64,000 nt of DNA from Basidiobolus meristosporus CBS 931.73 (Eukaryota > Fungi > Basidiobolomycota). The stretch is taken from contig MCFE01000062.1 of NCBI GenBank assembly GCA_002104905.1, positions 1-64,000 of the forward strand. The letters run 5' to 3'. The position numbers and the translations under genes were made by a program. Position 1 is the first letter of the stretch; every line of letters begins with the position of its first letter. Under the pieces are notes generated by a model, which was not told where the DNA came from, made no database searches, and was given only the letters and a program-made list of their open reading frames with translations. Shown piece by piece: positions 1,390 through 17,388 of the stretch.

Positions 1390-4300
1390 ATGTTAACCAT
1401 TAGAGAACCCATATTGGAAAACTCTGGAAGCCATGAAGATGGAAAACATCTAACGAAGCCCAGAGAGATGCAGTCAGACGCTTTTCCTTTTTCTCTGGAG
1501 CAAGAGCAAATATGGGCATTTGAGAAGGGTTCTTCTAATTCAGCAAACAACCTTCCGATAGCACTCTTATTGAGAGGGCCACTTGACTGCGATGCTTTGA
1601 AATGGTCCATAGCGCAATTGGTGAATCGTTACCCCCTTTTACGTAGTAAGGTCCTAGATGGTAAAGTTCCTCATCTACAAATAGGAATCACTGGGCCTAC
1701 AGCAATTCAATTAGAGGAGCATGGCGTTCCCAAGATTCCTACCGAAGAAAATATCCGCGAATGTATTGAAGAAGAGGTTAACCAGCCATTCAGTTTAACC
1801 CAAGAATATCCGATCCGCATAAAGCTTCTAAAGTTTATTCAAGACATCAGCCTGATGGTCATTACTGTTCATCGTTTAGCTGCAACGTTGGAAACTATGC
1901 ACTCTCTCCAAAGCAATCTTGCGGTATTATACAACTCGTATGGAGTGGCTAGAGAGCACAACTTTGAGGCTGTTCAAGAATTCAATCCTGAACAGCAATA
2001 TCAGAATATCTCTCAAACCATTTTGAAGGATCAAATTACATTTTGGGAAGAGCATCTAGCCGGACTGGCCCCCATTGGACTATCAACAGACAAGTTACGA
2101 CGAAACAACAGCATTAATCGTGCCCGCATACAAAAAATGCACATCCCAGAGGAGCTTTCAGTCAAGTTAACTCGTATCACAGAGCAGAATCAAACCGATT
2201 TGTATACCACGCTTCTGTCTGCTGTCCAGATACTTTTATACCTCTACACCAAAAATGAAGATATCGCTGTAGCCACTAACCTGCAATTCTATACTTCCAC
2301 TGTTAACACCACGCAAATAGTCAGGTCGGAAATCAAAGGCGAAAAGACTTTCGAAGAATTAATACAAGGAGTTAAACACAAGGTTATTGAAGTCTTAAAA
2401 CACCAGGGCTGGCCTTGGCAAAAGTACTTTTCCGAATCTAACACTAGAGATGAACAAGGATTCCCCAAAATAGAGGTGTACTTTGATGTTCATAATTGGA
2501 AACAAGAGGAAATTCAAATGCATGATCTCGAAGTCACCTGCCTAAACGATTTCGAGCGGTCTACATCATATGAACTGGAAATCCATGTTTTCAACGAAGG
2601 TACTGGCTTACAAATCCAGTTTATCTACCAGACCGATGTGTTACATATCACAACAGTGCAGAAAATGCAGCAGGTTCTCTTCAAGCTACTGGATTCCCTA
2701 ACTTCCGACTCCAGCCTTTCACTAGACAACGTCGAGTTGCTAGACAAACAAGAACGCGAAATGCTAATGCAGGATTGGAATGAGACTGAGTCAATATATC
2801 CAAATTCCCAATCAATCCCAGATGAATTCGAGAAGCAGGTCCTGGCTGCACCAGAGGCAGTAGCAGTAGTACACAATGATACTAAGTTGACCTACCAGCA
2901 ACTACACCAAATGTCCGATCGCCTTGCCTCTCATCTAGTCAGCCTGGGCGTGCGCATTGAGTCTGCCGTTGGTGTTTGCTTGGATCGCTCTCCCCTAATG
3001 GTGGTCGCCTTGTTGGCCATCCTCAAGGCTGGCGGTGCCTACGTCCCACTTGACTCCCAGTATCCCTCCGAAAGACTGCAGTTCATGCTTTCCGACACAG
3101 AGGCCACCGTCGTGATTTGCCAGAAATCAAACATGGCCAGCATACCCAAGGGAGAGTACAAGCTGGTATGCCTGGATGAGGAGATGGATAGTCTGATGAG
3201 TGGCCCGTACACCCCGACACCAAGTCGGTCAACCTCATCCAACCTTGCTTACATCATATATACCTCAGGGTCCACCGGAACTCCTAAGGGTGTTTTGGTT
3301 GAGCAACGGTCAGTGGTCCGCCTGGTCAAGAACACCGACTATGTGAACATCCAGGCAGGCGACAGCATTGCCCACATCTCCAGCACTTCATTCGATGCTG
3401 CAACATTCGAGGTTTGGGGGGCTCTGCTCAATGGCGCCACAGTCGTATGCATGAGTCATGCTGAGGTGATTGACCTGAACGTCTTGGCCAAGAACATGGC
3501 AAAATACTCGGTAACCACCATGTTCCTGACCACCGCTTTGTTCAACCGCATAGTCGAGGATTCCCCCGATGTGTTTGTCAGTGTGAAGCAGGTAATGTTC
3601 GGAGGCGAGGCTGTCGACCATCGCTCTGTCCAAAGGTTCCTTGCCCTACCAGATCGACCAAGGCTTCTCCATGTTTACGGCCCTACGGAAAACACCACGT
3701 TCTCAACCTGGTATGAGGTGGACCACATCTCAAGCAACATCCCCATCGGAAAGCCCATCGCCAACAGCAAGGCCTACGTCCTCGATCACCAGCTCTTCCC
3801 TGTTCCTGTCGGCTTTGTGGGTGAGCTTTGTGTCGCTGGGGATGGCTTGGCTAGAGGCTACCTCAATAGGCCAGACCTGACTGCTCAGAAGTTCGTGGTC
3901 AACCCCAATCCGGAATGCAACGGCGAGATTCTCTATCGCACTGGAGATCTCGCACGCTACAGAAGTGACGGGAACCTGGAGTTTGTTGGGCGTATGGATC
4001 ATCAAGTCAAGGTCCGCGGATTCCGGATTGAGTTGGGCGAGGTTGAGAATGCACTCCTACAGCAGGACTCAATCAAGGAATGTGTGGTTGTGGCCCGCGA
4101 AGACCTCTCGGGAGAGAAGCAGCTGGTTGGCTATGTGGTGGTCAATGGGGAGACGACCTCTGGAATGGATGTCCAACAAGTGGATGAGTGGGAGACCGTG
4201 TTCGACCAGCATGTCTACGAGGAGCTTGGAAATGATATAGCCGAGCCATCATTCAACATCACCGGGTGGAAATGTACCCTCACCGGGGAAGATATTCCAT

Positions 4301-7300
4301 CAGATGAAATGCGAGAGTGGCTGAGAGATACCATATCCGGCATCAGAAGCCTTGGAGGTCAGGACATCCTTGAAATTGGCTGCGGTACTGGAATGTTGCT
4401 CTTTGAGATTGCCCCTCATTGTAGGCGCTACCTGGGCACGGATGTCTCCAGCGCGGCTCTCTCGTACGTCAGCAGGTACCTCGATACCTACTCACTCCGT
4501 GATACTGTCCAGCTCGAGCAGCGTGGTGGTGACCAACTGGAAGATATGGTGGAGCAAAGCTTCGACACTGCGATCTGCAACTCTGTGGCCCAGTACTTTC
4601 CCAATATCGACTATCTCAGGGCGGTGATCACACGAGTGGTCAAGCTACTTCGCCCCGGAGGCCACTTCTTCCTTGGAGATATGCGTAGTCTCGTCCTCCT
4701 CAAGCATTTCCACTCCTCCATGGAGCTCCACAAAGCTCACAGCGACCTCAAGGTCTCCGAGCTGCAGCAAATCATCTCAGATCGAATGCTGAGCGAGAAA
4801 GAGCTGCTTGTCGATCCAGCCTTCTTCTTTGCTCTCAAGGAAGAGATCCCGGAGATCTCCCACGTGGATATTCTGACCAAGTCCGGGGATAGTCTCAACG
4901 AGCTCACCCAATATCGTTACCAAGCGATTATTCATGTTGGCCCTGGCAGCGACCGAGAGGTCGTGGAACACTGGCTAGACTATCAAGAGGCCAGCCTGAC
5001 CCTCGAGAGAGTCGAGGAGCAGCTTCTGCTAAGTCGGCCTCAGTGCCTCGCCCTGGAGAATGTTCCCAACATCCGGCTATCCCGCGAGGTTGCTCTCGTC
5101 AAGCTTCTGGAGGCCGAGCAGTCCAAAGATTTGACAGTCGCGAGGGTACGAGAACTGCTCGAGAAGGAAGCACCAACTGGAGTGAAAGTGGATGATCTGT
5201 ACACTCTTGCTGAGAAGACAGGATACCATGTGAGCGTCAGCTGGAACAGACAGCTACGCGACGGAAGCTTTGATGTGATTTTCAGCAAGCGACAAGGTAC
5301 TGAAAGTCTTCCTCCACGCCACCTATTCAAAGAGCCAGAGTTCTATGCTTGGAAGTGGAAGTCCTATGGCAACAACCCTATGCACGAGGCAGTCAACAAG
5401 CAGTTCGTCCCACGCTTGCGGGATCAGCTACGTGCAGTGTTGCCCAAGTTCATGGTCCCAAGTGCGATAGTCATCCTCGATGCTCTCCCTCTCATGCCCA
5501 ATGGTAAGATCAACCGCCGAGCACTGCCTGCACCTGGATCCCATCAGGTCGGCGATGATGCCGCCTATGTGCCCCCCAGAACCCCATTAGAGCTGGCAAT
5601 CGGAAGCATTGTGGCCGAGATCCTTGGCTTCGAGAGGGTCAGCATTCACGACAACTTCTTCGACTTGGGAGGCCATTCCCTGTCAGCCACCAAGGTGATG
5701 TCTCGTGTCCGCATCATAGTGAAGCAGGAAGTGCCACTGAAGATGCTCTTCGAAGCACCCACCGTCGCATCCTTGAGTGAAAGACTGGAAGAAATGATCA
5801 ATGAGAACACCGAGGTTGATGAATCGGTCCCTGTGCTGAGGAGACTTGATCGTGGGGAAGAAATTCCGCTGTCGTTTGCGCAGGAGAGACTGTGGTTTAT
5901 GAACGAACTGGTTCCTAATAGCCCTTTTTATAATATTCCACTGGTCCTTACACTAAATGGGCATTTAAACGAATGCGCGTTGAAATCGTCAATCGAGTCG
6001 ATTTTGAATCGTCATGAAGCCTTGAGAACTGTATTTCCGGTGGTGGACGGGAAGCCTATCCAACGAATTGAAGGCAGTACTTCTATTCAATGGGAGATTG
6101 AAGACATATCGCAGCATTCGAACTGTAAAGAGCTACTTAAATCGAGAATCACGGAGGAGTCAGTGAAGCCGTTTGACTTGGTTAGAGGCCCGGTAATCCG
6201 GTTTAATGTTATCCGTGTTGCTCCCCAGGAACATGTGCTCTTGATTATTTTGCATCATATTGTTTCCGACGGATGGTCTATTACTCTTATTCAGGAGGAA
6301 CTATCTGCTCTGTATAGCTCTCACATACATGGAGATCAGCCACAACTCTCAAGCTTACCAATTCAATATGCCGATTTTTCAGTGTGGCAGCGGGAGTGGC
6401 TACAAGGTGAGAATTTAGATCGACAGATGAAATATTGGAAGGGACAGCTTGAAGGAATTGCAAATTTGGCATTGCCAACAGACTACCCAAGAGCATCAAT
6501 GATGAATTTCCAAGGTGCTGTAGTGAGCACCCAAATACCCCGTGGTTTGACTCAGCGATTGGTTGATATCTGTCAGAAAAAGGGAACCACCCTGTTTATG
6601 ACGCTTTTGGCTGCATTCGAAATTTTGTTGTATCGCTATACTGAGCAGGAAGATATTGTGATTGGCTCCCCGATCGCAAATCGCAACCGAAAAGAGATCG
6701 AAGGTTTGATTGGGTTTTTCGTAAATACCCAGGTTCTTCGGGTACATATTGAGCACGACTTGACCTTCTCGAACCTCCTATCTCGCGTGAAGGCAGTAAC
6801 CCTGGATGCTTACAGCCATCAGGATGTACCATTCGAGCAAATCGTCGCGGAGCTTCAACCAGAGCGAGACCTTAGCCGTAATCCATTGGTTCAGGTGATG
6901 TTTGCTTTGCAAGAAGTGTTGATAGACGAATTTCCGTTCGGTGACATGACAGCAACTTCAGTAAGCTCCAACGAGATCACCACAAGATTTGACCTTGAAG
7001 TGCACTTCTGGAAGCATAATGAGGGGCTCAAAGCCGACTTCATCTACAGTACAAGTCTTTTCAAGTCGGAAACAATGGAGCGAATGCTACGCCACTTGCA
7101 TAGAATATTGGAAGCCGTGGCCGAGGATCCATATCAGCCCATTGGCAATATTGATATTTTGGATCCTTCGGAGCGACAAAAATATCTGATCGACTGGAAC
7201 CCGATTGACAAGACTCCTCGCGATGGCAAATCCATCGTAGGTGCGTTTGAGGATCAAGTACGAAATACTCCCGACGCCGTAGCTGTGATCCAGGATGAGT

Positions 7301-10300
7301 TGACTCTCACATATCTCCAATTACAAGAGCAGTCCAATCAGCTAGCTAGATACCTGATGAGCATTGGTGTCGAAACCGAGTCGTACGTTGGTATATGTAT
7401 GGAACGTTCGCCGCTAATGATTATCGCACTACTGGCTATACTCAAAGCTAGAGCGGCCTATGTCCCACTTGATTCCCAATCACCACCAGATAGACTGGCA
7501 CACATACTGACAGACACTAGGGCGACGGTTGTAATCTGTCAAAAGTCAACTATGAGCATTTTACCGGATGGTGACTATAAGAATGTGTGTCTTGATCTAG
7601 AGATCCCTGGGTTGTTAGACCTTTCTCCAGATCGCATCGAAAACGCACCCACCCCTAACAACCTTGCGTATATTATATACACCTCAGGTTCCACGGGAAC
7701 ACCCAAAGGGGTTCTTATCGAACATCGTTCTGTCGTTGGTATGGTAAAAGATGTTCAATATCTCAGTATATGTAATGAGGACAAAGTATCACATATTGCT
7801 AGTCCATCGTTTGATGCCGCTGTGTTCGAGATATGGGGATCCCTTCTTAACGGCGCAATGCTGGTATGCTTTAGCCGGGAAGATATTCTTGACCTGGGGG
7901 TCTTTTCGAAGAAAGTCGCCTCATATGGGGTGAATACTCTCTTCTTGACCACAGCGCTCTTCAACCATTGCGTTGAGTCTGCACCTGGACTTTTTGATCG
8001 AGTTGACAATGTTCTGATTGGTGGTGAGCAGGCTGATCATCGTAGAGTCAAGCAGTTCTTGGAATTGTCTACTGGCGGTAGACTATTGAATATGTATGGC
8101 CCTACTGAAAATTCCACCTTTTCTACCTGGCACGAGATTACTCAGCAGTACGATACAGTTCCCATTGGAAAGCCTATTACAGGTAGACGCGCCTATATTC
8201 TCGATAGATCTCTGAGACCGGTTCCTGTGGGTGTAATCGGCGAGTTATGCGTTGCCGGAGGAGGGCTGGCTAGAGGCTATCTTAACCGAGAACAAGCTAC
8301 TTCCCAAAGCTTCGTCATTAACCCAAACAAAGAATGTAATGGCGAGGTTATCTATCGTACCGGAGATCGGGCTCGTTTAATGAATGATGGTAATATACAA
8401 TTTGTTGGTCGTATCGATCACCAAGTGAAAATCCGTGGCTATCGAATCGAGCTGGGTGAGATAGACGGTGTGTTGCAGCGTAACAAGTCTGTCGCACAAA
8501 GTTATGTTACGACCAAATCACTCTCAGCAGATGAGAAGAGTATAGTGGCATATGTTGTGATGAGCAAGGAAGCGCCACCCCTCAGTCTTCCTTCACTAAC
8601 GGAATATCTGGCCTCGAAACTCCCCAAATACATGATGCCAACTGCGATAATTATTCTGGATCAAATGCCATTATTACCTAGTGGCAAGCTGGACTTCAAG
8701 GCGTTACCGAATCCTGGAGCTCAAAACACTCTCTCTCATGTAGCCTACGTAGCACCGCGAGATTTTACTGAGCAATGCATTGCTGAAGCTTGGCAAGAAG
8801 TCCTGAATATTGAAAGAGTTGGAATTTATGACAATTTCTTCGATCTTGGTGGCCACTCGCTTTCAGCAACAAAAGCAATCTCCCGTATAGGGCATTTATT
8901 CAAGAAAGAGATAGCATTGAAATGGATCTTCGAATTTCCCACAGTGATCTCGTTGGGCCAAAAGGTATCTGAGGTTCTCGGAAGTAATAGCTGCTCTATG
9001 AATTCGCCGATAGTGAAGCAGCAGAAAAAAAACACATTGCAAATGTCATTTGCCCAAGAACGACTGTGGTTTATGAATCAGTTGATGCCTGATAATCCAT
9101 TTTACAACATGCCGCTTGCCCTGAATATCAAGGGCAAATTAGATATCCAGGTTCTGGAGTCCGTGATCAACACAGTTGTCAAGCGTCATGATATCCTTAG
9201 AACCACATTCGGGAATTCGGGATGCAACCCTATTCAAAAGATTAACCCCCATAGCGAGTTTCTGCTTCAAATGGTAGATATTTCAAAATCTCCTGGAAAT
9301 ACTCGGGAGCTGAGGGCGTATATTACATCCGAATCACAAAAACCGTTCGATTTGGTCAATGGCCCAGTTATACGGGTGAATTTAGTTAAAGTCGGCGAGG
9401 AAGAGCATATTCTTCTGATCGTCCTTCATCACATCATCTCTGACGGTTGGTCCATCACTGTGTTACAAGAAGAGCTTTCCTTGTTATATAGGGCCTATTC
9501 ACAGGGCTTACCGTCCCCGCTGCATGAACTAACTATTCAGTACGCCGATTTCGCAGTATGGCAAAGGGAATGGTTACAAGGTGAAAACTTCGAGAAGCAG
9601 ATGCAGTACTGGAAAGATCAATTGAGTGGAATTGGAGACTTATCGCTGCCCACGGATTACATTCGACCACCTGTGTTAAGCTACAATGGAGGGTTAGAGC
9701 AATTGGAACTTTCTGCTTCCCTTACTAATGATTTACGCGACCTGAGTAAGAAGGAATCGTCTACTTTATTCATGACCCTCTTAGCCGCATTTGAGGTACT
9801 GCTATTTAGATACACAGGGCAGGAAGATATTGCGATCGGCTCTCCGATTGCGAATAGAAATCGAAAGGAAATTGAGCGCCTCATCGGTTTCTTCGTAAAT
9901 ACTCAGGTGATACGTGTTCAGGTTGATCGTGAGGCAACTTTCAATGAGCTAGTATCCCGCGTGAAGGAGGTAACCTTGGGAGCGTATAGTCATCAAGATG
10001 TGCCATTCGAACAAATTGTTGCTGAGCTACAACCCGAGAGAGACTTGAGTCGCAATCCATTAGTTCAAGTGATGTTCGTTTTGCAAGATGCAACCGTGGA
10101 CGCCTTTACTTTTGGAGACCTAAATGCTACCTTGGTGAACACTGACCGAATTAGTACACGTTTTGATTTAGAAGTACATTTCTGGAAACGTGATGAAGGA
10201 TTGAAGGCAGATTTCATCTACAGTACTGACCTGTTCAGCCCTAAAACCATGAAACACATGCTTTTAGACTTGCATAAGATACTGCAGATGGTGGCAACCA

Positions 10301-13300
10301 ACCCTGATCTTCCTATTGGCGATCTGAACATGCTGGATTCCGCCGAAAGAGGTAGTCTGCTAGTTGATTGGAATAATACATCAACAGACTATCCACGAGA
10401 CAATTCCTTGGTGGCCATTTTTAAGAATCAAGTTCAAAGCACACCTGAGGCAGTAGCAGTAGTACACAATGATACTAAGCTGACCTACCAGCAACTACAC
10501 CAAATGTCCGATCGCCTTGCCTCTCATCTAGTCAGCCTGGGCGTGCGCATTGAGTCTGCCGTTGGTGTTTGCTTGGATCGCTCTCCCCTAATGGTGGTCG
10601 CCTTGTTGGCCATCCTCAAGGCTGGCGGTGCCTACGTCCCACTTGACTCCCAGTATCCCTCCGAAAGACTGCAGTTCATGCTTTCCGACACAGAGGCCAC
10701 CGTCGTGATTTGCCAGAAATCAAACATGGCCAGCATACCCAAGGGAGAGTACAAGCTGGTATGCCTGGATGAGGAGATGGATAGCCTGATGAGTGGCCCG
10801 TACACCCCGACACCAAATCGGTCAACCTCATCCAACCTTGCTTACATCATATATACCTCGGGGTCCACCGGAACTCCTAAGGGTGTTTTGGTTGAGCAAC
10901 GGTCAGTGGTCCGCCTGGTCAAGAACACCGACTATGTGAACATCCAGGCAGGCGACAACATTGCCCACATCTCCAGCACTTCATTCGATGCTGCAACATT
11001 CGAGGTTTGGGGGGCTCTGCTCAATGGCGCCACAGTCGTATGCATGAGTCATGCTGAGGTGATTGACCTGAACGTCTTGGCCAAGAACATGGCAAAATAC
11101 TCGGTAACCACCATGTTCCTGACCACCGCTTTGTTCAACCGCATAGTCGAGGATTCCCCCGATGTGTTTGTCAGTGTGAAGCAGGTGATGTTCGGAGGCG
11201 AGGCTGTCGACCATCGCTCTGTCCAAAGGTTCCTTGCCCTACCAGATCGACCAAGGCTTCTCCATGTTTACGGCCCTACGGAAAACACCACGTTCTCAAC
11301 CTGGTATGAGGTGGACCACATCTCAAGCAACATCCCCATCGGAAAGCCCATCGCCAATAGCAAGGCCTACGTCCTCGATCACCAGCTCTTCCCTGTTCCT
11401 GTCGGCTTTGTGGGTGAGCTTTGTGTCGCTGGAGATGGCTTGGCTAGAGGCTACCTCAATAGGCCAGACCTGACTGCTCAGAAGTTCGTGGTCAACCCCA
11501 ATCCGGAATGCAACGGCGAGATTCTCTATCGCACTGGAGATCTCGCACGCTACAGAAGTGACGGGAACCTGGAGTTTGTTGGGCGTATGGATCATCAAGT
11601 CAAGGTCCGCGGATTCCGGATTGAGTTGGGCGAGGTTGAGAATGCACTCCTACAGCAGGACTCAATCAAGGAATGTGTGGTTGTGGCCCGCGAAGACCTC
11701 TCGGGAGAGAAGCAGCTGGTTGGCTATGTGGTGGTCAATGGGGAGACGACCTCTGGAATGGATGTCCAACAAGTGGATGAGTGGGAGACCGTGTTCGACC
11801 AGCATGTCTACGAGGAGCTTGGAAATGATATAGCCGAGCCATCATTCAACATCACCGGGTGGAAATGTACCCTCACCGGGGAAGATATTCCATCAGATGA
11901 AATGCGAGAGTGGCTGAGAGATACCATATCCGGCATCAGAAGCCTTGGAGGTCAGGACATCCTTGAAATTGGCTGCGGTACTGGAATGTTGCTCTTTGAG
12001 ATTGCCCCTCATTGTAGACGCTACCTCGGCACGGATGTCTCCAGCGCGGCTCTCTCGTACGTCAGCAGGTACCTCGATACCTACTCACTCCGTGATACTG
12101 TCCAGCTCGAGCAGCGTGGTGGTGACCAACTGGAAGATATGGTGGAGCAAAGCTTCGACACTGCGATCTGCAACTCTGTGGCCCAGTACTTTCCCAATAT
12201 CGACTATCTCAGGGCGGTGATCACACGAGTGGTCAAGCTACTTCGCCCCGGAGGCCACTTCTTCCTTGGAGATATGCGTAGTCTCGTCCTTCTGAAGCAT
12301 TTCCACTCCTCCATGGAGCTCCACAAAGCTCACAGCGACCTCAAGGTCTCCGAGCTGCAGCAAATCACCTCGGATCGAATGCTGAGCGAGAAAGAGCTGC
12401 TTGTCGATCCAGCCTTCTTCTTTGCTCTCAAGGAAGAGATCCCGGAGATCTCCCACGTGGATATTCTGACCAAGTCCGGGGATAGTCTCAACGAGCTCAC
12501 CCAATATCGTTACCAAGCGATTATTCATGTTGGCCCTGGCAGCGACCGCGAGGTCGTGGAACACTGGCTAGACTATCAAGAGGCCAGCCTGACCCTCGAG
12601 AGAGTCGAGGAGCAGCTTCTGCTAAGTCGGCCTCAGTGCCTCGCCCTGGAGAATGTTCCCAACATCCGGCTATCCCGCGAGGTTGCTCTCGTCAAGCTTC
12701 TGGAGGCCGAGCAGTCCAAAGATTTGACAGTCGCGAGGGTACGAGAACTGCTCGAGAAGGAAGCACCAACTGGAGTGAAAGTGGATGATCTGTACACTCT
12801 TGCTGAGAAGACAGGATACCATGTGAGCGTCAGCTGGAACAGACAGCTACGCGACGGAAGCTTTGATGTGATTTTCAGCAAGCGACAAGGTACTGAAAGT
12901 CTTCCTCCACGCCACCTATTCAAAGAGCCAGAGTTCTATGCTTGGAAGTGGAAGTCCTATGGCAACAACCCTATGCACGAGGCAGTCAACAAGCAGTTCG
13001 TCCCACGCTTGCGGGATCAGCTACGTGCAGTGTTGCCCAAGTTCATGGTCCCAAGTGCGATAGTCATCCTCGATGCTCTCCCTCTCATGCCCAATGGTAA
13101 GATCAACCGCCGAGCACTGCCTGCACCTGGATCCCATCAGGTCGGCGATGATGCCGCCTATGTGCCCCCCAGAACCCCATTAGAGCTGGCAATCGGAAGC
13201 ATTGTGGCCGAGATCCTTGGCTTCGAGAGGGTCAGCATTCACGACAACTTCTTCGACTTGGGAGGCCATTCCCTGTCAGCCACCAAGGTGATGTCTCGTG

Positions 13301-16300
13301 TCCGCATCATAGTGAAGCAGGAAGTGCCACTGAAGATGCTCTTCGAAGCACCCACCGTCGCATCCTTGAGTGAAAGACTGGAAGAAATGATCAGTGAGAA
13401 CACCGAGGTTGATGAATCGGTCCCTGTGCTGAGGAGACTTGATCGTGGGGAAGAAATTCCGCTGTCGTTTGCGCAGGAGAGACTGTGGTTTATGAACGAA
13501 CTGGTTCCTAATAGCCCTTTTTATAATATGCCGCTGACCTTGACACTAAGTGGAACTCTCAATATTGATGCTCTGAAGAAATCTATCCTGAATATCATTC
13601 ATCGGCATGAAACCTTAAGAACAACTTTCCAACTCTCCTCTAACGGTCCAGTTCAAACGATTAAGCCTGTCTCCGATTTTTCTACGTCTCTTGTTGATTT
13701 CGTCGATATAACCTCCAATCAACAGTCGCTTCGAACTATTATTGCTCAGGAATCTGCTAAGCCTTTTAGCTTGAAGGATGGACCCTTAATTAGAGTCAAG
13801 CTCATACAAATTGCATCAGGAGAGTATGTACTAGTTATTGTTATACACCACATTGTATCCGATGGGTGGTCAATAGCTGTGTTGCAGAAGGAGCTTGCAG
13901 CCTTTTATGAATCTAATATATGTTCTAAGCCACAACCCTTATCCGAACTATCTATTCAGTACGTGGACTTTGCCGTATGGCAGCGTGAATGGCTACAAGG
14001 TGTAAGGCTGCAGAAGCAATCAAGTTACTGGAAAAAACAACTACAAGGCATTACACCACTAGCTTTGGCTACTGATAAGATACGCCCAGCAATATCGAGT
14101 CACCATGGCCAGACTTATCAACTATTTTTATCAGGACCATTGACTAGAAAGCTACGAGCCCTGGGTCAAAACCATGGTGCAACATTATTTATGACACTGT
14201 TGGCAGCTTTCCAGGTCTTGCTCTACAAGAGCACCGGTCAGAACGACATCGCCGTTGGTTCTCCTATTGCCAATCGTAATCGAAAAGAAATTGAGGCACT
14301 GATTGGTTTCTTTGTCAACACCTTGGTGCTTCGTGTGCAGGTTAACCCGGACGCGACGTTCAGTGATATACTTAACCAAGTCAAAGCCACTACCCTCGAT
14401 GCTTATGGCAATCAGGATTTACCATTTGAAAAGGTGGTAGCAGAATTACAGCCTGAACGCGATCTGAGTCGTAATCCACTAGTACAGGTGATCTTTGCAC
14501 TGCATGAATTGTCAATTGACAAATTCGAAATGAAAGATCTAAAGGTCAATGTCTACAACGATGACCTGGTAACATCCCGCATGGATTTAGAGGTGCACAT
14601 CTATCCACAAGATTATGGACTGAGGATAGAAGCAATCTACTGTAGTGATTTGTTTGTTTCAAGCACCATTGAGCAATTGTTCAAAGGTTTCCTTAACATC
14701 TTGGAATCTATTACTGCAGACTCCCATCAAACGGTGGGAAGAATTAGTTTACTTGATGCCTCCGAACGCGAATCTCTGCTTTTAAACCGTAATCTGACAC
14801 ACTCCCAGTACCCATGCGACCAATCCATGGTCGACCTCTTTGAGAGTCAAGTCAAAATAATTCCCGATGATATTGCTGTGGTAGACAATGACCTTCAACT
14901 TACCTACCAGCAACTACACCAAATGTCCGATCGCCTTGCCTCTCATCTAGTCAGCCTGGGCGTGCGCATTGAGTCTGCCGTTGGTGTTTGCTTGGATCGC
15001 TCTCCCCTAATGGTGGTCGCCTTGTTGGCCATCCTCAAGGCTGGCGGTGCCTACGTCCCACTTGACTCCCAGTATCCCTCCGAAAGACTGCAGTTCATGC
15101 TTTCCGACACAGAGGCCACCGTCGTGATTTGCCAGAAATCAAACATGGCCAGCATACCCAAGGGAGAGTACAAGCTGGTATGCCTGGATGAGGAGATGGA
15201 TAGTCTGATGAGTGGCCCGTACACCCCGACACCAAATCGGTCAGCCTCATCCAACCTTGCTTACATCATATATACCTCGGGGTCCACCGGAACTCCTAAG
15301 GGCGTTTTGGTTGAGCAACGGTCAGTGGTCCGCCTGGTCAAGAACACCGACTATGTGAACATCCAGACAGGTGACAACATTGCCCACATCTCCAGCACTT
15401 CATTCGATGCTGCAACATTCGAGGTTTGGGGGGCTCTGCTCAATGGTGCCACGGTTGTTTGTATAAAGCATTCCGAAGTTATTGACTTCCAACTGCTTTC
15501 CAAGAATCTATCTACCCACTCCGTAAGCATTCTATTCTTGACTACAGCACTATTCAACCGCATAGTCGAGGATGCCCCCAATGTGTTTGACAGTGTGAAG
15601 CAGGTGATGTTCGGAGGTGAGGCTGCAGATCCCCACTCTATTCAACAATTTCTCTCGCTGGTCAACCGGCCAAGATTGCTGAATATTTACGGCCCTACCG
15701 AAAACACTGCATTCTCAACCTGGTATGAGGTGGACCACATCTCAAGCAACATCCCCATCGGAAAGCCCATCGCCAATAGCAAGGCCTACGTCCTCGATCA
15801 CCAGCTCTTCCCTGTTCCTGTCGGCTTTGTGGGTGAGCTTTGTGTCGCTGGGGATGGCTTGGCTAGAGGCTACCTCAATAGGCCAGACTTGACTGCTCAG
15901 AAGTTCGTGGTCAACCCCAATCCGGAATGCAACGGCGAGATTCTCTATCGCACTGGAGATCTCGCACGCTACAGAAGTGACGGGAACCTGGAGTTTGTTG
16001 GGCGTGTGGATCGTCAAGTGAAGATTCGTGGCTTCCGAATCGAGTTAGATGAAATCAAATCCAAATTAATGGAGCACTCTGGCGTCAAGGAATGCGCTGT
16101 GCTAGTAAATGAGAAGTCTGGTGTAAAGCGCATTATAGCTTATGTTGTCAAAAGTGCAGATTCTCTAGATTCTAACGAGGACACTCTACTGAACTACCTT
16201 GCCAAATCCCTACCAAGGTATATGCTACCACACGCATTAATCATGCTAGATGGCCTTCCGCTTCTACCTAGTGGGAAGTTGGATACTCAATCTCTCGCCG

Positions 16301-17388
16301 CATTAACTGATAACTCCTTAACCTCAAAGTCTCACGTTGAGCCACGCACTCCTCTAGAAAGCAGCCTCGCAAGTATCATGGCCGAGGTACTATCTCTGGA
16401 ACAAGTTGGTATCGATGATAGCTTTTTCGATCTTGGTGGGCATTCGTTATTGTCGATTCATTTCATTGCAAGAATTCGGAAGTCTTTGGAAACGAACGTC
16501 AGCTTACAAGCTCTCTTTGAGGCACCAACTGTAGCTATGTTGGCGAAATATATCAGCAAGAACCAGAATGGGGAGCACGATATTATGGAAAATCCAGTAA
16601 CCGTACTCCGCAAAGGAAGTGACGAAACTCCTATTGTCATGGTTCATGCCATTGGCGGTGGTCTTTCGTGTTACCAGCCACTTCTCGAAGCATTTTGTCA
16701 AGAACAGACTATATACGGAGTGTATTCCTCTGATTTCCTCGGACTTAGTCAGAGACAAACATTCCCAGATATGAAATCCATGGCTGAGTATTATGTTCAG
16801 TCGTTACTGAGACTCTCCAACGCAAAGAGGTTTATACTTGGCGGTTGGTCATATGGAGGCAATGTTGCCTTTGAGATGGCCATCCAACTACAGAAGATGG
16901 GAATCACGGTGCCGATAGTGGTGCTTTTTGACTCATATCCCCTATTCGGAGTTCCCAATCACGAGTTGTTCTCAGTCCCGTTGACCACAATGATTACCAC
17001 TTTGATGAACCAGATGCAAGAATCCACGGAGATTGTGTCGGAGGAGTTAATCATGGTGCGAGACCTATTCGGATTGAGTACGAACATGACCAGAGACGAT
17101 GAGGTCACCCTTGAGCTACTTACCAGCGCCCTTAAGAGGATTAACCACATGCAGGAATATCTTCCTGACCCCTATGAGGGCACAGTATACCAGTTTAGAA
17201 GCTCCGACGTCCAAGTGTACGATCCCGAAGATACTGAGCGTGTCTCGAGTCAGGCAAGACAATGGTCCGAATTCGTCAATGGGGAGTACATCACCGAAAC
17301 AGTGGCTGGAACCCATTTCACCATAATGCAGTCGCCTTATGTTGAAACTATTGCCACAAAACTGGAGCCAATTGTTAGAGGATTATAA
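1390..17388 (+). CDS. Tetramodular NRPS, C0-A1(nMT)-T1-C2-A2-T2-C3-A3(nMT)-T3-C4-A4-T4-TE, single exon (~5330 aa)
   Basis: Uninterrupted ORF. Four A domains (YIIYTSGSTGTPKG, YGPTE, YRTGD), four T domains (FFDLGGHSL), three intact C domains (HHIxSDG), two SAM-binding N-methyltransferases (ILEIGCGTG) inserted between A8 and A9, and a terminal thioesterase (GWSYGG...GTHF). First ATG is 1390, alternative 1468; the ORF track's 1330 start is TTG. Confidence 0.97.
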   Translation: MLTIREPILENSGSHEDGKHLTKPREMQSDAFPFSLEQEQIWAFEKGSSNSANNLPIALLLRGPLDCDALKWSIAQLVNRYPLLRSKVLDGKVPHLQIGITGPTAIQLEEHGVPKIPTEENIRECIEEEVNQPFSLTQEYPIRIKLLKFIQDISLMVITVHRLAATLETMHSLQSNLAVLYNSYGVAREHNFEAVQEFNPEQQYQNISQTILKDQITFWEEHLAGLAPIGLSTDKLRRNNSINRARIQKMHIPEELSVKLTRITEQNQTDLYTTLLSAVQILLYLYTKNEDIAVATNLQFYTSTVNTTQIVRSEIKGEKTFEELIQGVKHKVIEVLKHQGWPWQKYFSESNTRDEQGFPKIEVYFDVHNWKQEEIQMHDLEVTCLNDFERSTSYELEIHVFNEGTGLQIQFIYQTDVLHITTVQKMQQVLFKLLDSLTSDSSLSLDNVELLDKQEREMLMQDWNETESIYPNSQSIPDEFEKQVLAAPEAVAVVHNDTKLTYQQLHQMSDRLASHLVSLGVRIESAVGVCLDRSPLMVVALLAILKAGGAYVPLDSQYPSERLQFMLSDTEATVVICQKSNMASIPKGEYKLVCLDEEMDSLMSGPYTPTPSRSTSSNLAYIIYTSGSTGTPKGVLVEQRSVVRLVKNTDYVNIQAGDSIAHISSTSFDAATFEVWGALLNGATVVCMSHAEVIDLNVLAKNMAKYSVTTMFLTTALFNRIVEDSPDVFVSVKQVMFGGEAVDHRSVQRFLALPDRPRLLHVYGPTENTTFSTWYEVDHISSNIPIGKPIANSKAYVLDHQLFPVPVGFVGELCVAGDGLARGYLNRPDLTAQKFVVNPNPECNGEILYRTGDLARYRSDGNLEFVGRMDHQVKVRGFRIELGEVENALLQQDSIKECVVVAREDLSGEKQLVGYVVVNGETTSGMDVQQVDEWETVFDQHVYEELGNDIAEPSFNITGWKCTLTGEDIPSDEMREWLRDTISGIRSLGGQDILEIGCGTGMLLFEIAPHCRRYLGTDVSSAALSYVSRYLDTYSLRDTVQLEQRGGDQLEDMVEQSFDTAICNSVAQYFPNIDYLRAVITRVVKLLRPGGHFFLGDMRSLVLLKHFHSSMELHKAHSDLKVSELQQIISDRMLSEKELLVDPAFFFALKEEIPEISHVDILTKSGDSLNELTQYRYQAIIHVGPGSDREVVEHWLDYQEASLTLERVEEQLLLSRPQCLALENVPNIRLSREVALVKLLEAEQSKDLTVARVRELLEKEAPTGVKVDDLYTLAEKTGYHVSVSWNRQLRDGSFDVIFSKRQGTESLPPRHLFKEPEFYAWKWKSYGNNPMHEAVNKQFVPRLRDQLRAVLPKFMVPSAIVILDALPLMPNGKINRRALPAPGSHQVGDDAAYVPPRTPLELAIGSIVAEILGFERVSIHDNFFDLGGHSLSATKVMSRVRIIVKQEVPLKMLFEAPTVASLSERLEEMINENTEVDESVPVLRRLDRGEEIPLSFAQERLWFMNELVPNSPFYNIPLVLTLNGHLNECALKSSIESILNRHEALRTVFPVVDGKPIQRIEGSTSIQWEIEDISQHSNCKELLKSRITEESVKPFDLVRGPVIRFNVIRVAPQEHVLLIILHHIVSDGWSITLIQEELSALYSSHIHGDQPQLSSLPIQYADFSVWQREWLQGENLDRQMKYWKGQLEGIANLALPTDYPRASMMNFQGAVVSTQIPRGLTQRLVDICQKKGTTLFMTLLAAFEILLYRYTEQEDIVIGSPIANRNRKEIEGLIGFFVNTQVLRVHIEHDLTFSNLLSRVKAVTLDAYSHQDVPFEQIVAELQPERDLSRNPLVQVMFALQEVLIDEFPFGDMTATSVSSNEITTRFDLEVHFWKHNEGLKADFIYSTSLFKSETMERMLRHLHRILEAVAEDPYQPIGNIDILDPSERQKYLIDWNPIDKTPRDGKSIVGAFEDQVRNTPDAVAVIQDELTLTYLQLQEQSNQLARYLMSIGVETESYVGICMERSPLMIIALLAILKARAAYVPLDSQSPPDRLAHILTDTRATVVICQKSTMSILPDGDYKNVCLDLEIPGLLDLSPDRIENAPTPNNLAYIIYTSGSTGTPKGVLIEHRSVVGMVKDVQYLSICNEDKVSHIASPSFDAAVFEIWGSLLNGAMLVCFSREDILDLGVFSKKVASYGVNTLFLTTALFNHCVESAPGLFDRVDNVLIGGEQADHRRVKQFLELSTGGRLLNMYGPTENSTFSTWHEITQQYDTVPIGKPITGRRAYILDRSLRPVPVGVIGELCVAGGGLARGYLNREQATSQSFVINPNKECNGEVIYRTGDRARLMNDGNIQFVGRIDHQVKIRGYRIELGEIDGVLQRNKSVAQSYVTTKSLSADEKSIVAYVVMSKEAPPLSLPSLTEYLASKLPKYMMPTAIIILDQMPLLPSGKLDFKALPNPGAQNTLSHVAYVAPRDFTEQCIAEAWQEVLNIERVGIYDNFFDLGGHSLSATKAISRIGHLFKKEIALKWIFEFPTVISLGQKVSEVLGSNSCSMNSPIVKQQKKNTLQMSFAQERLWFMNQLMPDNPFYNMPLALNIKGKLDIQVLESVINTVVKRHDILRTTFGNSGCNPIQKINPHSEFLLQMVDISKSPGNTRELRAYITSESQKPFDLVNGPVIRVNLVKVGEEEHILLIVLHHIISDGWSITVLQEELSLLYRAYSQGLPSPLHELTIQYADFAVWQREWLQGENFEKQMQYWKDQLSGIGDLSLPTDYIRPPVLSYNGGLEQLELSASLTNDLRDLSKKESSTLFMTLLAAFEVLLFRYTGQEDIAIGSPIANRNRKEIERLIGFFVNTQVIRVQVDREATFNELVSRVKEVTLGAYSHQDVPFEQIVAELQPERDLSRNPLVQVMFVLQDATVDAFTFGDLNATLVNTDRISTRFDLEVHFWKRDEGLKADFIYSTDLFSPKTMKHMLLDLHKILQMVATNPDLPIGDLNMLDSAERGSLLVDWNNTSTDYPRDNSLVAIFKNQVQSTPEAVAVVHNDTKLTYQQLHQMSDRLASHLVSLGVRIESAVGVCLDRSPLMVVALLAILKAGGAYVPLDSQYPSERLQFMLSDTEATVVICQKSNMASIPKGEYKLVCLDEEMDSLMSGPYTPTPNRSTSSNLAYIIYTSGSTGTPKGVLVEQRSVVRLVKNTDYVNIQAGDNIAHISSTSFDAATFEVWGALLNGATVVCMSHAEVIDLNVLAKNMAKYSVTTMFLTTALFNRIVEDSPDVFVSVKQVMFGGEAVDHRSVQRFLALPDRPRLLHVYGPTENTTFSTWYEVDHISSNIPIGKPIANSKAYVLDHQLFPVPVGFVGELCVAGDGLARGYLNRPDLTAQKFVVNPNPECNGEILYRTGDLARYRSDGNLEFVGRMDHQVKVRGFRIELGEVENALLQQDSIKECVVVAREDLSGEKQLVGYVVVNGETTSGMDVQQVDEWETVFDQHVYEELGNDIAEPSFNITGWKCTLTGEDIPSDEMREWLRDTISGIRSLGGQDILEIGCGTGMLLFEIAPHCRRYLGTDVSSAALSYVSRYLDTYSLRDTVQLEQRGGDQLEDMVEQSFDTAICNSVAQYFPNIDYLRAVITRVVKLLRPGGHFFLGDMRSLVLLKHFHSSMELHKAHSDLKVSELQQITSDRMLSEKELLVDPAFFFALKEEIPEISHVDILTKSGDSLNELTQYRYQAIIHVGPGSDREVVEHWLDYQEASLTLERVEEQLLLSRPQCLALENVPNIRLSREVALVKLLEAEQSKDLTVARVRELLEKEAPTGVKVDDLYTLAEKTGYHVSVSWNRQLRDGSFDVIFSKRQGTESLPPRHLFKEPEFYAWKWKSYGNNPMHEAVNKQFVPRLRDQLRAVLPKFMVPSAIVILDALPLMPNGKINRRALPAPGSHQVGDDAAYVPPRTPLELAIGSIVAEILGFERVSIHDNFFDLGGHSLSATKVMSRVRIIVKQEVPLKMLFEAPTVASLSERLEEMISENTEVDESVPVLRRLDRGEEIPLSFAQERLWFMNELVPNSPFYNMPLTLTLSGTLNIDALKKSILNIIHRHETLRTTFQLSSNGPVQTIKPVSDFSTSLVDFVDITSNQQSLRTIIAQESAKPFSLKDGPLIRVKLIQIASGEYVLVIVIHHIVSDGWSIAVLQKELAAFYESNICSKPQPLSELSIQYVDFAVWQREWLQGVRLQKQSSYWKKQLQGITPLALATDKIRPAISSHHGQTYQLFLSGPLTRKLRALGQNHGATLFMTLLAAFQVLLYKSTGQNDIAVGSPIANRNRKEIEALIGFFVNTLVLRVQVNPDATFSDILNQVKATTLDAYGNQDLPFEKVVAELQPERDLSRNPLVQVIFALHELSIDKFEMKDLKVNVYNDDLVTSRMDLEVHIYPQDYGLRIEAIYCSDLFVSSTIEQLFKGFLNILESITADSHQTVGRISLLDASERESLLLNRNLTHSQYPCDQSMVDLFESQVKIIPDDIAVVDNDLQLTYQQLHQMSDRLASHLVSLGVRIESAVGVCLDRSPLMVVALLAILKAGGAYVPLDSQYPSERLQFMLSDTEATVVICQKSNMASIPKGEYKLVCLDEEMDSLMSGPYTPTPNRSASSNLAYIIYTSGSTGTPKGVLVEQRSVVRLVKNTDYVNIQTGDNIAHISSTSFDAATFEVWGALLNGATVVCIKHSEVIDFQLLSKNLSTHSVSILFLTTALFNRIVEDAPNVFDSVKQVMFGGEAADPHSIQQFLSLVNRPRLLNIYGPTENTAFSTWYEVDHISSNIPIGKPIANSKAYVLDHQLFPVPVGFVGELCVAGDGLARGYLNRPDLTAQKFVVNPNPECNGEILYRTGDLARYRSDGNLEFVGRVDRQVKIRGFRIELDEIKSKLMEHSGVKECAVLVNEKSGVKRIIAYVVKSADSLDSNEDTLLNYLAKSLPRYMLPHALIMLDGLPLLPSGKLDTQSLAALTDNSLTSKSHVEPRTPLESSLASIMAEVLSLEQVGIDDSFFDLGGHSLLSIHFIARIRKSLETNVSLQALFEAPTVAMLAKYISKNQNGEHDIMENPVTVLRKGSDETPIVMVHAIGGGLSCYQPLLEAFCQEQTIYGVYSSDFLGLSQRQTFPDMKSMAEYYVQSLLRLSNAKRFILGGWSYGGNVAFEMAIQLQKMGITVPIVVLFDSYPLFGVPNHELFSVPLTTMITTLMNQMQESTEIVSEELIMVRDLFGLSTNMTRDDEVTLELLTSALKRINHMQEYLPDPYEGTVYQFRSSDVQVYDPEDTERVSSQARQWSEFVNGEYITETVAGTHFTIMQSPYVETIATKLEPIVRGL
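1468..2760 (+). other. NRPS N-terminal condensation-like domain with degenerate active site
   Basis: Has C-domain motifs (FSLEQEQIW; LYTTLLSAVQILLYLYTKNEDIAV), but HHxxxDG reads HRLAATL at ~1870-1890. Boundaries approximate. Confidence 0.8.
2854..5936 (+). repeat. Direct repeat copy 1 (A1-nMT-T1-linker plus start of C2), 3083 bp
   Basis: Matches 10447-13529 at constant offset 7593 with about 16 substitutions counted by eye and no indels. Confidence 0.95.
4150..5390 (+). other. N-methyltransferase domain embedded in A1
   Basis: VDEWETVFD...GWKCTLTGEDIPSDEMREW...ILEIGCGTGMLLF...NSVAQYFP, followed by return to A9/A10 (LPKFMVPS...PNGKINRRALP). Boundaries approximate. Confidence 0.92.
10447..13529 (+). 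repeat. Direct repeat copy 2 (A3-nMT-T3-linker plus start of C4), 3083 bp
   Basis: Near-identical to 2854-5936; duplicated antisense ORFs in the ORF track show the same 7593 offset. Confidence 0.95.
11743..12983 (+). other. N-methyltransferase domain embedded in A3
   Basis: Near-identical copy of the module 1 nMT at offset +7593. Confidence 0.92.
14902..15452 (+). repeat. Partial third copy, N-terminal part of A4
   Basis: Near-identical to 2890-3440 (offset 12012). Confidence 0.9.
15712..16005 (+). repeat. Partial third copy, C-terminal part of A4 core
   Basis: Near-identical to 3700-3993 (offset 12012). Confidence 0.9.
16620..17385 (+). other. Terminal thioesterase domain
   Basis: VHAIGGGLSCY, GWSYGG nucleophile elbow, FDSYP, VAGTHFTIM. 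Boundaries approximate. Confidence 0.9.

What the first reader, a model, noticed from the sequence alone, without database searches (positions are those of the whole stretch)
14902..16005. A4 is a mosaic: flanks match A1/A3 but the specificity subdomain differs
Seen: 14902-15452 and 15712-16005 are near-identical to A1 (offset 12012), but the intervening ~260 bp (15453-15711) is diverged. That interval encodes most substrate-pocket positions, changing the code end from V-T-F to I-A-F. After 16005, A4 leaves the A1 sequence just before the nMT insertion point and has no MT. Established: natural NRPS diversification by exchange of the flavodoxin-like A subdomain has been described in bacteria. 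Inference: either the subdomain was swapped in, or gene conversion homogenised the flanks while selection protected the pocket. A fungal example would be notable.
Basis: partly seen in the sequence, partly recalled or inferred. Interest (0 to 1): 0.8.

Follow-up and report, generated by a model that had tools for sequence, protein, structure and literature searches.

The report
Gene-conversion mosaic in NRPS adenylation domain
In a four-module peptide-synthetase gene of the fungus Basidiobolus, the core of the fourth substrate-choosing domain was recently overwritten by copies from modules 1 and 3, except for two short old islands that hold two substrate-pocket residues; this is a clear example of a process already known in bacterial versions of these enzymes.

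Summary
Window 14902-16005 (A4) aligns without gaps to A1 (offset 12012) and A3 (offset 4419). The flanks are 98.7-99.3% identical (synonymous difference 0.02-0.03). 15447-15711 is only 71% identical.

Three things refine the finding.
- The diverged part is not one block. It is two islands (15447-15552 and 15625-15711) with saturated synonymous divergence, separated by a 72-nt patch that is again near-identical.
- The identity tract runs from core motif A1 to the A8 hinge. That is the "Acore exchange unit" already described for bacterial NRPSs.
- Third-position GC is 0.65 in the converted parts. It is 0.45 in the islands and 0.44 in A4's native linker and Asub.

A Basidiobolus ranarum orthologue shows that A4's linker and Asub are truly orthologous (97-100% support). 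Its A3 and A4 are not homogenised. The islands group with neither A1 nor the orthologous A4.

Best reading: repeated gene conversion within the gene among modules 1, 3 and 4, which spares two islands. A recent swapped-in subdomain is not supported: read-derived contigs of the genome hold no copy at 90% identity or more, and the islands are smaller than the flavodoxin-like subdomain.

Only two of ten specificity-code positions differ (322 V>I, 330 T>A), so a change of substrate is unproven. The scan already noted the same pattern in another NRPS of this genome (s1-212482). This is a new member of a known kind.

The parts
1390..17388 (+). Intronless NRPS gene, 5332 aa: C-A1(nMT)-T-C-A2-T-C-A3(nMT)-T-C-A4-T-TE
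   Evidence: One ORF. Pfam domains and core motifs. The architecture matches B. meristosporus gene model 387529 as described in PMC7466969.
2854..5936 (+). A1-nMT-T cassette, homogenised with module 3 (16 mismatches in 3083 nt); conversion partner of A4
   Evidence: Mismatch list at offset 7593. GC3 is 0.63 here against 0.43-0.48 in the rest of the gene.
10447..13529 (+). A3-nMT-T cassette, the second copy of the homogenised cassette; conversion partner of A4
14620..14901 (+). Native C-A linker and start of A4; not converted
   Evidence: 36-39% aa identity to the other modules. Groups with the B. ranarum A4 orthologue at 97-100% support when analysed together with the Asub part. GC3 0.43.
14902..15446 (+). 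Left converted tract, starting at core motif A1 (LTYxxL); includes code positions 235, 236 and 239
   Evidence: 7 mismatches to A1 and 5 to A3. dS 0.023. GC3 0.65. Shared contig at about 2x depth in X2 and X3.
15447..15552 (+). Island 1: old sequence, 14 of 36 residues differ from A1; contains code position 278 (F in both). In the model it is a strand-helix-strand unit (residues 182-217).
   Evidence: 41 of 106 nt differ. pS 0.84, dN 0.27. GC3 0.42. Secondary structure.
15553..15624 (+). Reconverted middle patch: 4 mismatches to A3, of which 3 are non-synonymous; holds code positions 299 and 301, which are identical to A1
   Evidence: 0 of 100000 permutations. GC3 0.67.
15625..15711 (+). Island 2: old sequence, 11 of 29 residues differ from A1; holds the two differing code positions, 322 (V>I) and 330 (T>A), around motif A5
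   Evidence: 32 of 87 nt differ. pS 0.82, dN 0.25. GC3 0.48. Code positions placed via the SrfA-C alignment.
15712..16005 (+). Right converted tract, ending inside the A8 hinge motif (GR|xD)
   Evidence: 2 mismatches, both synonymous. GC3 0.65. Shared contig.
16006..17388 (+). Native Asub, T and TE of module 4; no MT insert
   Evidence: 44-49% aa identity to the other modules. 69% aa identity to the B. ranarum A4 orthologue over the first 46 codons. Pfam AMP-binding_C, PP-binding and Thioesterase.

Best explanation
The gene is a bacterial-type four-module NRPS of Basidiobolus meristosporus. The large N-terminal parts (Acore, from core motif A1 to the A8 hinge) of adenylation domains 1, 3 and 4 evolve in concert through repeated gene conversion within the gene. 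A1 and A3 exchange a 3.08-kb A-nMT-T cassette. A4 takes part only over its 1.1-kb Acore, and keeps its own C-A linker, Asub, T and TE.

Within A4, conversion has homogenised three pieces: 14902-15446, 15553-15624 and 15712-16005. It has not replaced two short islands of 106 and 87 bp. These islands are old sequence with the base composition of the unconverted gene.

The result is that A4 has the A1/A3 scaffold plus 28 residue differences. Two of these are specificity-code positions, 322 (V>I) and 330 (T>A). All three domains keep a Leu/Ile/Val-type code.

Shown: the mosaic itself, the recency of the flanks, the age of the islands, the orthology of A4's outer parts, the absence of such homogenisation in B. 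ranarum, and the GC3 step.

Inferred:
- Conversion is recurrent and GC-biased.
- The islands persist for one or both of two reasons. Tracts that overwrite them may be removed by selection because they would change what module 4 loads. Or their roughly 40% divergence may itself block heteroduplex formation.
For: - Mosaic and breakpoints.
- Age contrast: flank dS is 0.023-0.030, while island pS is 0.82-0.84. That is as saturated as A1-A2 or the between-species comparisons.
- Star-like variants among A1, A3 and A4 in the shared tract: 5 sites where A4 is the odd one, 4 for A1, 2 for A3.
- Orthologue: B. ranarum contig L003 carries ...A2-T-C-A3(nMT)-T-C-A4-T-TE.
- Trees: for the outer segments, A4+BrA4 at 97-100%. 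For the flanks, A1+A4 at 100%.
- BrA3 and BrA4 are only 69% identical in the flank region, so this homogenisation is specific to B. meristosporus.
- Composition: GC3 is 0.65 in converted parts, 0.45 in the islands (Fisher p=0.003) and 0.44 in the native outer parts (p=6e-5). The same codons in B. ranarum give 0.33-0.39. W>S to S>W changes are 76:29 on the homogenised lineage, 15:11 in the islands and 34:23 in the outer parts.
- The tract edges lie at motif A1 and the A8 hinge. This matches the natural Acore exchange units that keep the C-A linker and Asub (PMC8097286) and the concerted-evolution model for NRPS domains (PMC4256081).
- Read contigs reproduce every junction.
- The gene is intact and is reported as the most highly expressed NRPS of the strain (PMC7466969).
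Against: - The islands do not group with the orthologous B. ranarum A4 core. Identity is 60% aa, against 58-65% to every other member of the clade, and there is a weak 73/71 pairing with the fragment Br_L001. 'Resident remnant' is therefore not demonstrated.
- Selection is untested. Only 2 of 10 code positions differ, and both codes look aliphatic.
- By BIC, the change-point models with and without the middle patch tie.
- The GC3 excess could instead reflect a different origin of the cassette. The W>S excess is only moderate.
- Short contigs cannot verify phasing across the shared 545-nt and 294-nt pieces.
Confidence: 0.7

Rival explanations
1. Subdomain import. The 15447-15711 stretch, or the two islands separately, was copied into an A1-like A4 from a third adenylation domain elsewhere in the genome or from a lost paralogue. 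Later conversion from A1/A3 restored the 72-nt middle patch.
For: - The islands group with neither A1 nor the orthologous A4. They share several residues with, and pair weakly (73/71 in the aa tree) with, a separate B. ranarum C-A(nMT) fragment, L001.
- The island edges lie next to conserved motifs A4 and A5. Natural and engineered swaps have their junctions at such places (PMC9205934; PMC8097286).
- Basidiobolus carries many NRPS genes that could act as donors.
Against: - No second contig at 90% identity or more lies over the core in three runs of this organism.
- No donor exists in the 64-kb window.
- The best matches to the 89-aa core outside this gene are only 67% and 65% identical. That library hides close relatives behind cluster representatives, so this is weak evidence.
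- The diverged part is discontinuous and shorter than a flavodoxin-like subdomain.
- Island GC3 equals that of the native parts of the same gene.
- The model needs at least one more event than the sparing model.
Confidence: 0.17
2. One recent patchy conversion event. A single heteroduplex spanned 14902-16005, and mismatch repair restored the recipient sequence in two patches. No recurrence and no selection are involved.
For: - The three converted pieces have similar, very low divergence.
- Discontinuous conversion tracts are known from yeast meiosis (my own knowledge, not checked here).
Against: - If A4's Acore had been as diverged as its islands (about 38-40% nt), there would have been no homology on which to start or extend a heteroduplex.
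- A rise in GC3 from about 0.4 to 0.65 over the homogenised tracts needs many substitutions, so a long history of conversion.
- The middle patch carries proportionally more differences than the flanks: 4 of 72 against 7 of 839 versus A3. This suggests the pieces differ in age.
Confidence: 0.08
3. Artefact. The mosaic is an assembly chimera among three near-identical repeats, or the core diverged quickly under positive selection after complete conversion.
For: Three copies at 99% identity within 13 kb are hard to assemble. Contigs of the shared pieces are collapsed paralogue mixtures.
Against: - The A4-type core piece (15417-15741) is present with zero differences in all three runs, at about single-copy depth in X2 and X3. 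It carries the junction words to both shared flanks. The two outer junctions are also present.
- Rapid divergence is excluded. About 41 of roughly 49 synonymous sites' worth of change in the islands sits beside flanks with pS 0.02-0.03, and dN is well below the saturated dS.
Confidence: 0.03

Closest known systems
Natural Acore exchange units in bacterial NRPSs (Baunach et al. 2021, PMC8097286)
   Same: The recombined unit lies inside the Acore, between core motifs A1/A2 and the A8 hinge. The native C-A linker, Asub and Asub-T interface are kept. Modules with an MT between A8 and A9 are also involved.
   Different: Here the exchange is between modules of one gene in a fungus. It homogenises rather than diversifies, and the part that stays different is two small islands inside the unit.
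Concerted evolution of NRPS/PKS domains, with escape through functional divergence or sequence distance (Medema et al. 2014, PMC4256081)
   Same: Domains within one synthetase are more alike than their orthologues are. The model predicts that parts protected by function or by divergence escape homogenisation.
   Different: That work is at the level of whole-domain trees in bacteria. Here the escape is resolved to 106-bp and 87-bp islands, and comes with a composition footprint.
Near-identical hormaomycin A domains that differ in the pocket region, and engineered flavodoxin-like subdomain swaps (Cruesemann 2013 and Kries 2015, as cited in PMC8097286; Thong 2021, PMC8616955)
   Same: An identical scaffold with a differing stretch between motifs A4 and A5 that carries pocket residues.
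   Different: The differing stretch is 89 aa, not about 130-140. It is discontinuous, leaves out code positions 235, 236 and 239, and changes only two code positions. No donor is known.
Intragenomic A-domain recombination in the wollamide/desotamide cluster (Booth et al. 2022, PMC9205934)
   Same: The recombinant region runs from motif A2 to A5/A6 and preserves the C-A interface.
   Different: In that case a donor elsewhere in the genome was identified and the substrate changed. Neither is shown here.
GC-biased gene conversion between paralogues (general knowledge, not checked in the library)
   Same: Third-position GC is raised exactly in the stretches that undergo conversion.
   Different: Here it is only inferred from GC3 and polarised substitutions within one gene. 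No direct measurement exists for Basidiobolus.

Membership tests
NRPS adenylation domain (ANL superfamily) | Pfam AMP-binding plus AMP-binding_C, and core motifs A3, A5, A7, A8 and A10 intact in A4 | tested here: met
   Pfam. Motif matches at 15277, 15682, 15946, 16000 and 16258. Best PDB hit is LgrA at E=1.5e-184. The model has mean pLDDT 88.8.
Interrupted A domain with N-methyltransferase between A8 and A9 | MT domain inserted after A8 | tested here: not met
   A1 and A3 have the insert (Methyltransf_12 and others; about 4156-5415 in A1). A4 has none. A4 is therefore a plain A domain that carries the Acore of interrupted ones.
Gene conversion / concerted evolution between paralogous segments | Paralogues within the species are nearly identical at synonymous sites, while adjacent sequence is saturated | tested here: met
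   dS is 0.023-0.030 in the flanks. pS is 0.7-0.9 in the pre, post and island segments.
Gene conversion / concerted evolution between paralogous segments | Paralogues group together to the exclusion of orthologues from a related species | tested here: met
   In the flank tree A1+A4 has 100% support. The outer segments of the same domain group with B. ranarum A4 at 97-100%.
Gene conversion / concerted evolution between paralogous segments | Sharp breakpoints that are statistically supported | tested here: met
   Change points after 14901, 15446, 15711 and 16005. Permutation tests.
Gene conversion / concerted evolution between paralogous segments | GC bias in converted tracts | tested here: inconclusive
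   GC3 is 0.65 against 0.45 and 0.44 (p=0.003 and 6e-5), and W>S to S>W is 76:29. The pattern fits, but a different origin of the cassette is not excluded.
Flavodoxin-like subdomain swap (Kries / Cruesemann type) | One contiguous exchanged block that covers the subdomain (about 130-140 aa) with nine of the ten code positions | tested here: not met
   The diverged part is 89 aa in two islands of 36 and 29 aa, with a converted patch between them. Positions 235, 236, 239, 299, 301 and 331 lie in converted sequence. The subdomain size of 139 aa is from PMC8616955.
Flavodoxin-like subdomain swap (Kries / Cruesemann type) | An identifiable donor domain | tested here: not met
   No contig at 90% identity or more in genome reads. 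None in the window. The best matches outside this gene are 67% and 65%. The placement of the islands in the tree is unresolved.
Flavodoxin-like subdomain swap (Kries / Cruesemann type) | Changed substrate specificity | not testable with these tools
   The codes are DAFFMGVTFK (A1/A3) and DAFFMGIAFK (A4). Both resemble SrfA-C Leu, DAFFLGCVFK. Adenylation assays are needed.

The most novel reading that the evidence does not exclude
The two islands (36 and 29 codons, 25 residue differences, plus 3 in the middle patch) may be a naturally minimised specificity cassette, about half the size of the flavodoxin-like subdomain. Selection would hold it against long-running GC-biased conversion so that module 4 loads a different aliphatic residue from modules 1 and 3. 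The GC3 steps would then record which codons have or have not taken part in conversion in an early-diverging fungus.
Probability: 0.3. Interest if true: 0.55.

Novelty: new member of a known kind. Interest (0 to 1): 0.36.

Why it matters
A1/A3 and A4 form a natural matched pair. They share the same Acore scaffold within one enzyme and differ by 28 residues confined to 89 positions. If their substrates differ, the pair defines a very small transplantable unit for re-engineering A domains, and it comes ready-made in a gene that is highly expressed. If their substrates are the same, the pair shows that divergence alone can shelter islands from conversion. The GC3 steps also offer a cheap way to map conversion history in the many repetitive NRPS genes of this genome. 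The process itself (Acore-limited recombination and concerted evolution of NRPS domains) is already established in bacteria, so the value here is a clean, testable case rather than a new principle.

Tried and rejected
- Fetching the gene's own contig by protein failed because the protein is over 5000 aa.
- The first whole-length protein search found only the gene itself plus bacterial NRPSs at about 45% identity. The length filter hid the B. ranarum relatives until I used queries of other lengths. One attempt timed out and was not counted.
- The representative search with the 89-aa core gave no donor. It does not list the B. ranarum orthologue P0496 or the window's own protein, so close relatives are hidden behind cluster representatives. 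I treat this negative result as weak.
- A look-up of the core by sequence in the scan's earlier findings was blank.
- Trees of the 65 island codons are unresolved, with support of 28-73%. They cannot decide between a resident remnant and an old import.
- The two B. ranarum fragments L001 and L002 lie on contigs of 2.3-2.4 kb, so their gene context is unknown.
- I considered and rejected A2 as donor of the islands: identity is 48% aa and 54% nt.
- I also rejected rapid divergence after conversion, because the islands are saturated at synonymous sites.
- I placed the code positions using conserved motifs and the SrfA-C alignment. I did not obtain a direct alignment to GrsA (1AMU), because it did not rank among the alignments shown. 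The code position numbers (GrsA numbering) and the reading of those codes as Leu/Ile/Val types rest on my own knowledge; SrfA-C's residues at those positions were read from the alignment.
- I found no link of this gene to basidiosins beyond the suggestion cited in PMC7466969. Basidiosins are pentapeptides with D residues, whereas this gene has four modules and four condensation-family domains.
Full report
WHAT THE GENE IS

The window carries one uninterrupted ORF, 1390-17388 on the + strand, of 5332 aa. Pfam and core motifs give the architecture C-A1(nMT)-T-C-A2-T-C-A3(nMT)-T-C-A4-T-TE. The rest of the window is gene-poor and looks eukaryotic.

Outside this gene, the nearest relatives are Basidiobolus ranarum proteins. 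After those come bacterial NRPSs at about 45% identity. Earlier notes of the scan name the genome as Basidiobolus meristosporus.

The architecture matches gene model 387529 of strain CBS 931.73. [quoted passage not shown] That paper does not mention recombination or gene conversion.

CHECKING THE OBSERVATION

The four A domains align without gaps from the C-A linker to beyond motif A8. At offset 12012 (A1) or 4419 (A3), A4 is near-identical from 14902 to 16005.
- 14902-15446 has 7 mismatches to A1.
- 15712-16005 has 2 mismatches.
- 15447-15711 has 78 mismatches, which is 70.8% nt and 68.5% aa identity.
- Outside the tract, third-position identity is about 0.3, which is saturation.

Change-point analysis places breaks after 14901, 15446, 15711 and 16005. 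No permutation out of 20000 reproduces the clustering of mismatches.

Logan contigs from three public runs (two samples, one study) break exactly at these edges. They contain an A4-specific piece, 15417-15741, with no differences from the window. In X2 and X3 its depth is about single-copy. The shared pieces have roughly double depth in those two runs and carry the paralogue variants. So the mosaic is in the reads. Only the phasing across the two shared pieces rests on the assembly.

(a) The "core" is two islands. 15447-15552 differs from A3 at 41 of 106 nt, and 15625-15711 at 32 of 87 nt. Between them, 15553-15624 differs at only 4 sites, one of them at a third codon position. A1 and A2 differ at 33 of 72 sites in the same patch. 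No permutation out of 100000, stratified by codon position, gives such a clean patch. By BIC, the models with and without this patch tie.

(b) The outer edges fall on core motif A1 (LTYxxL) and inside the A8 hinge motif. A4 therefore keeps its own C-A linker, Asub, T and TE. Its Asub has no MT. A1's insert begins 54 codons further on.

(c) The ages differ sharply.
- In the flanks, dS is 0.023-0.030.
- In the islands, pS is 0.82-0.84. That is as saturated as A1-A2 or the between-species pairs.
- Island dN is 0.25-0.27.
The islands are therefore old sequence under purifying selection. They are not recent adaptive change.

(d) Composition marks the tracts.
- GC3 is 0.63 in the A1/A3 cassette and 0.65 in the converted parts of A4.
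- GC3 is 0.45 in the islands and 0.44 in A4's native linker and Asub (Fisher p=0.003 and 6e-5; islands against native parts, p=1.0).

THE ORTHOLOGUE

A third protein search found B. ranarum protein P0496 on a 17.3-kb contig (L003). The contig is open from its first bases and encodes ...A2(part)-T-C-A3(nMT)-T-C-A4-T-TE.

Trees by segment:
- A4's linker plus Asub group with B. ranarum A4 at 97-100% support.
- The flanks of A4 group with A1 at 100%.
- The islands group with neither. Support there is 28-73%, with a weak pairing to a separate B. ranarum C-A(nMT) fragment, L001.

In B. ranarum, A3 and A4 are only 69% identical where the B. meristosporus copies are 99% identical. GC3 at the same codons is 0.33-0.39. 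Polarised against the B. ranarum sequences, the homogenised lineage shows 76 W>S changes against 29 S>W. The islands show 15:11 and the native parts 34:23.

MECHANISM

The simplest account is repeated gene conversion within the gene among the Acores of modules 1, 3 and 4.

Several observations point to a long-running process rather than one event:
- The three copies differ from one another in a star-like way.
- The GC3 shift needs many substitutions.
- The middle patch carries proportionally more differences than the flanks.

The islands are stretches that conversion has not replaced. I see two non-exclusive reasons, and both are inferred. First, tracts that cover island 2 would reset code positions 322 and 330 and could be removed by selection. 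Second, about 40% divergence blocks heteroduplex extension, so an island sustains itself once it has formed. Island 1 holds no differing code position, which favours the second reason for that island at least.

The published model of NRPS concerted evolution predicts exactly such escape (PMC4256081). The tract limits match the natural Acore exchange units that keep the C-A linker and Asub (PMC8097286).

SPECIFICITY

A gapless alignment to SrfA-C (2VSQ) places the code positions.
- SrfA-C reads DAFFLGCVFK. Its Leu assignment is my own knowledge.
- A1 and A3 read DAFFMGVTFK.
- A4 reads DAFFMGIAFK.
- A2 reads DAFFLGMTFK.

All are aliphatic-type codes. A4 differs from A1/A3 at two pocket positions and at 26 other residues of the 89. 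In the AlphaFold model (mean pLDDT 88.8), island 1 covers residues 182-217, a strand-helix-strand unit. Island 2 covers residues 242-270: a helix, the strand bearing position 322, and the A5 loop. Whether the substrate differs cannot be decided with these tools.

RIVALS

- Import of the islands from a third A domain remains possible as an old event, because the islands do not sit with the orthologous A4. A recent import is excluded: no second copy at 90% identity or more exists in the read contigs or in the window. The diverged stretch also fails the definition of a flavodoxin-like subdomain swap on size, contiguity and content.
- A single patchy event is unlikely. There would have been no homology to start it, and the composition shift needs time.
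- An assembly artefact or a burst of positive selection is contradicted.

VERDICT

The phenomenon is known in bacterial NRPSs. The scan also noted it before in another NRPS of this same genome (s1-212482, which I did not test). This is a clean, experimentally tractable new member of a known kind. The islands-within-a-tract structure and the GC3 footprint are its most interesting details.

Noticed in passing
window 2854-5936 and 10447-13529: The A-nMT-T cassettes of modules 1 and 3 differ at only 16 of 3083 nt. GC3 steps up from about 0.45 to about 0.65 exactly at the cassette edges.
   Followed up: partly
window 16870-17229: The C-terminal part of the TE domain also has raised GC3 (0.62-0.65). 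It has no similar sequence elsewhere in the window. Unexplained.
   Followed up: partly
window 1564-2607: The first condensation-family domain is only 26% identical to C4 and has no HHxxxD match, unlike C2-C4. It may be a starter-type or non-canonical C domain.
   Followed up: no
L003:1-9327, L001, L002 (B. ranarum): B. ranarum has at least three A(nMT)-type Acores (L003 module 3, L001, L002), while the B. meristosporus gene has two. L003-A3 and L002 are 83% nt and 93% aa identical just after A8, and 79% nt identical in island 1, but 66% nt in the left flank. This hints at older, separate conversion in that species.
   Followed up: partly
L001:253-2384: The public gene model for P0173 does not translate collinearly from its contig, although the whole 2.4-kb contig is one open frame. 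The model probably has a spurious intron.
   Followed up: partly
window 15574, 15580, 15590: Three of the four differences inside the reconverted middle patch are non-synonymous (S>A, D>N, V>D). At two of them A4 shares its residue with other homologues: A at the first with A2 and several B. ranarum sequences, and D at the third with A2 only. They may be single-site remnants or selected sites.
   Followed up: partly
window 49510-53100, 46354-48078, 24442-26241: The neighbouring long ORFs encode a complete B12-dependent methionine synthase (five Pfam domains in one 1196-aa ORF), a ThrE-family exporter and a SulP sulfate permease.
   Followed up: no
whole gene, window 1390-17388: The literature suggests this gene makes the basidiosins. 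These are cyclic pentapeptides with D residues. The gene has four modules and exactly four condensation-family domains, so the link looks doubtful unless a module acts twice and a C domain epimerises.
   Followed up: partly
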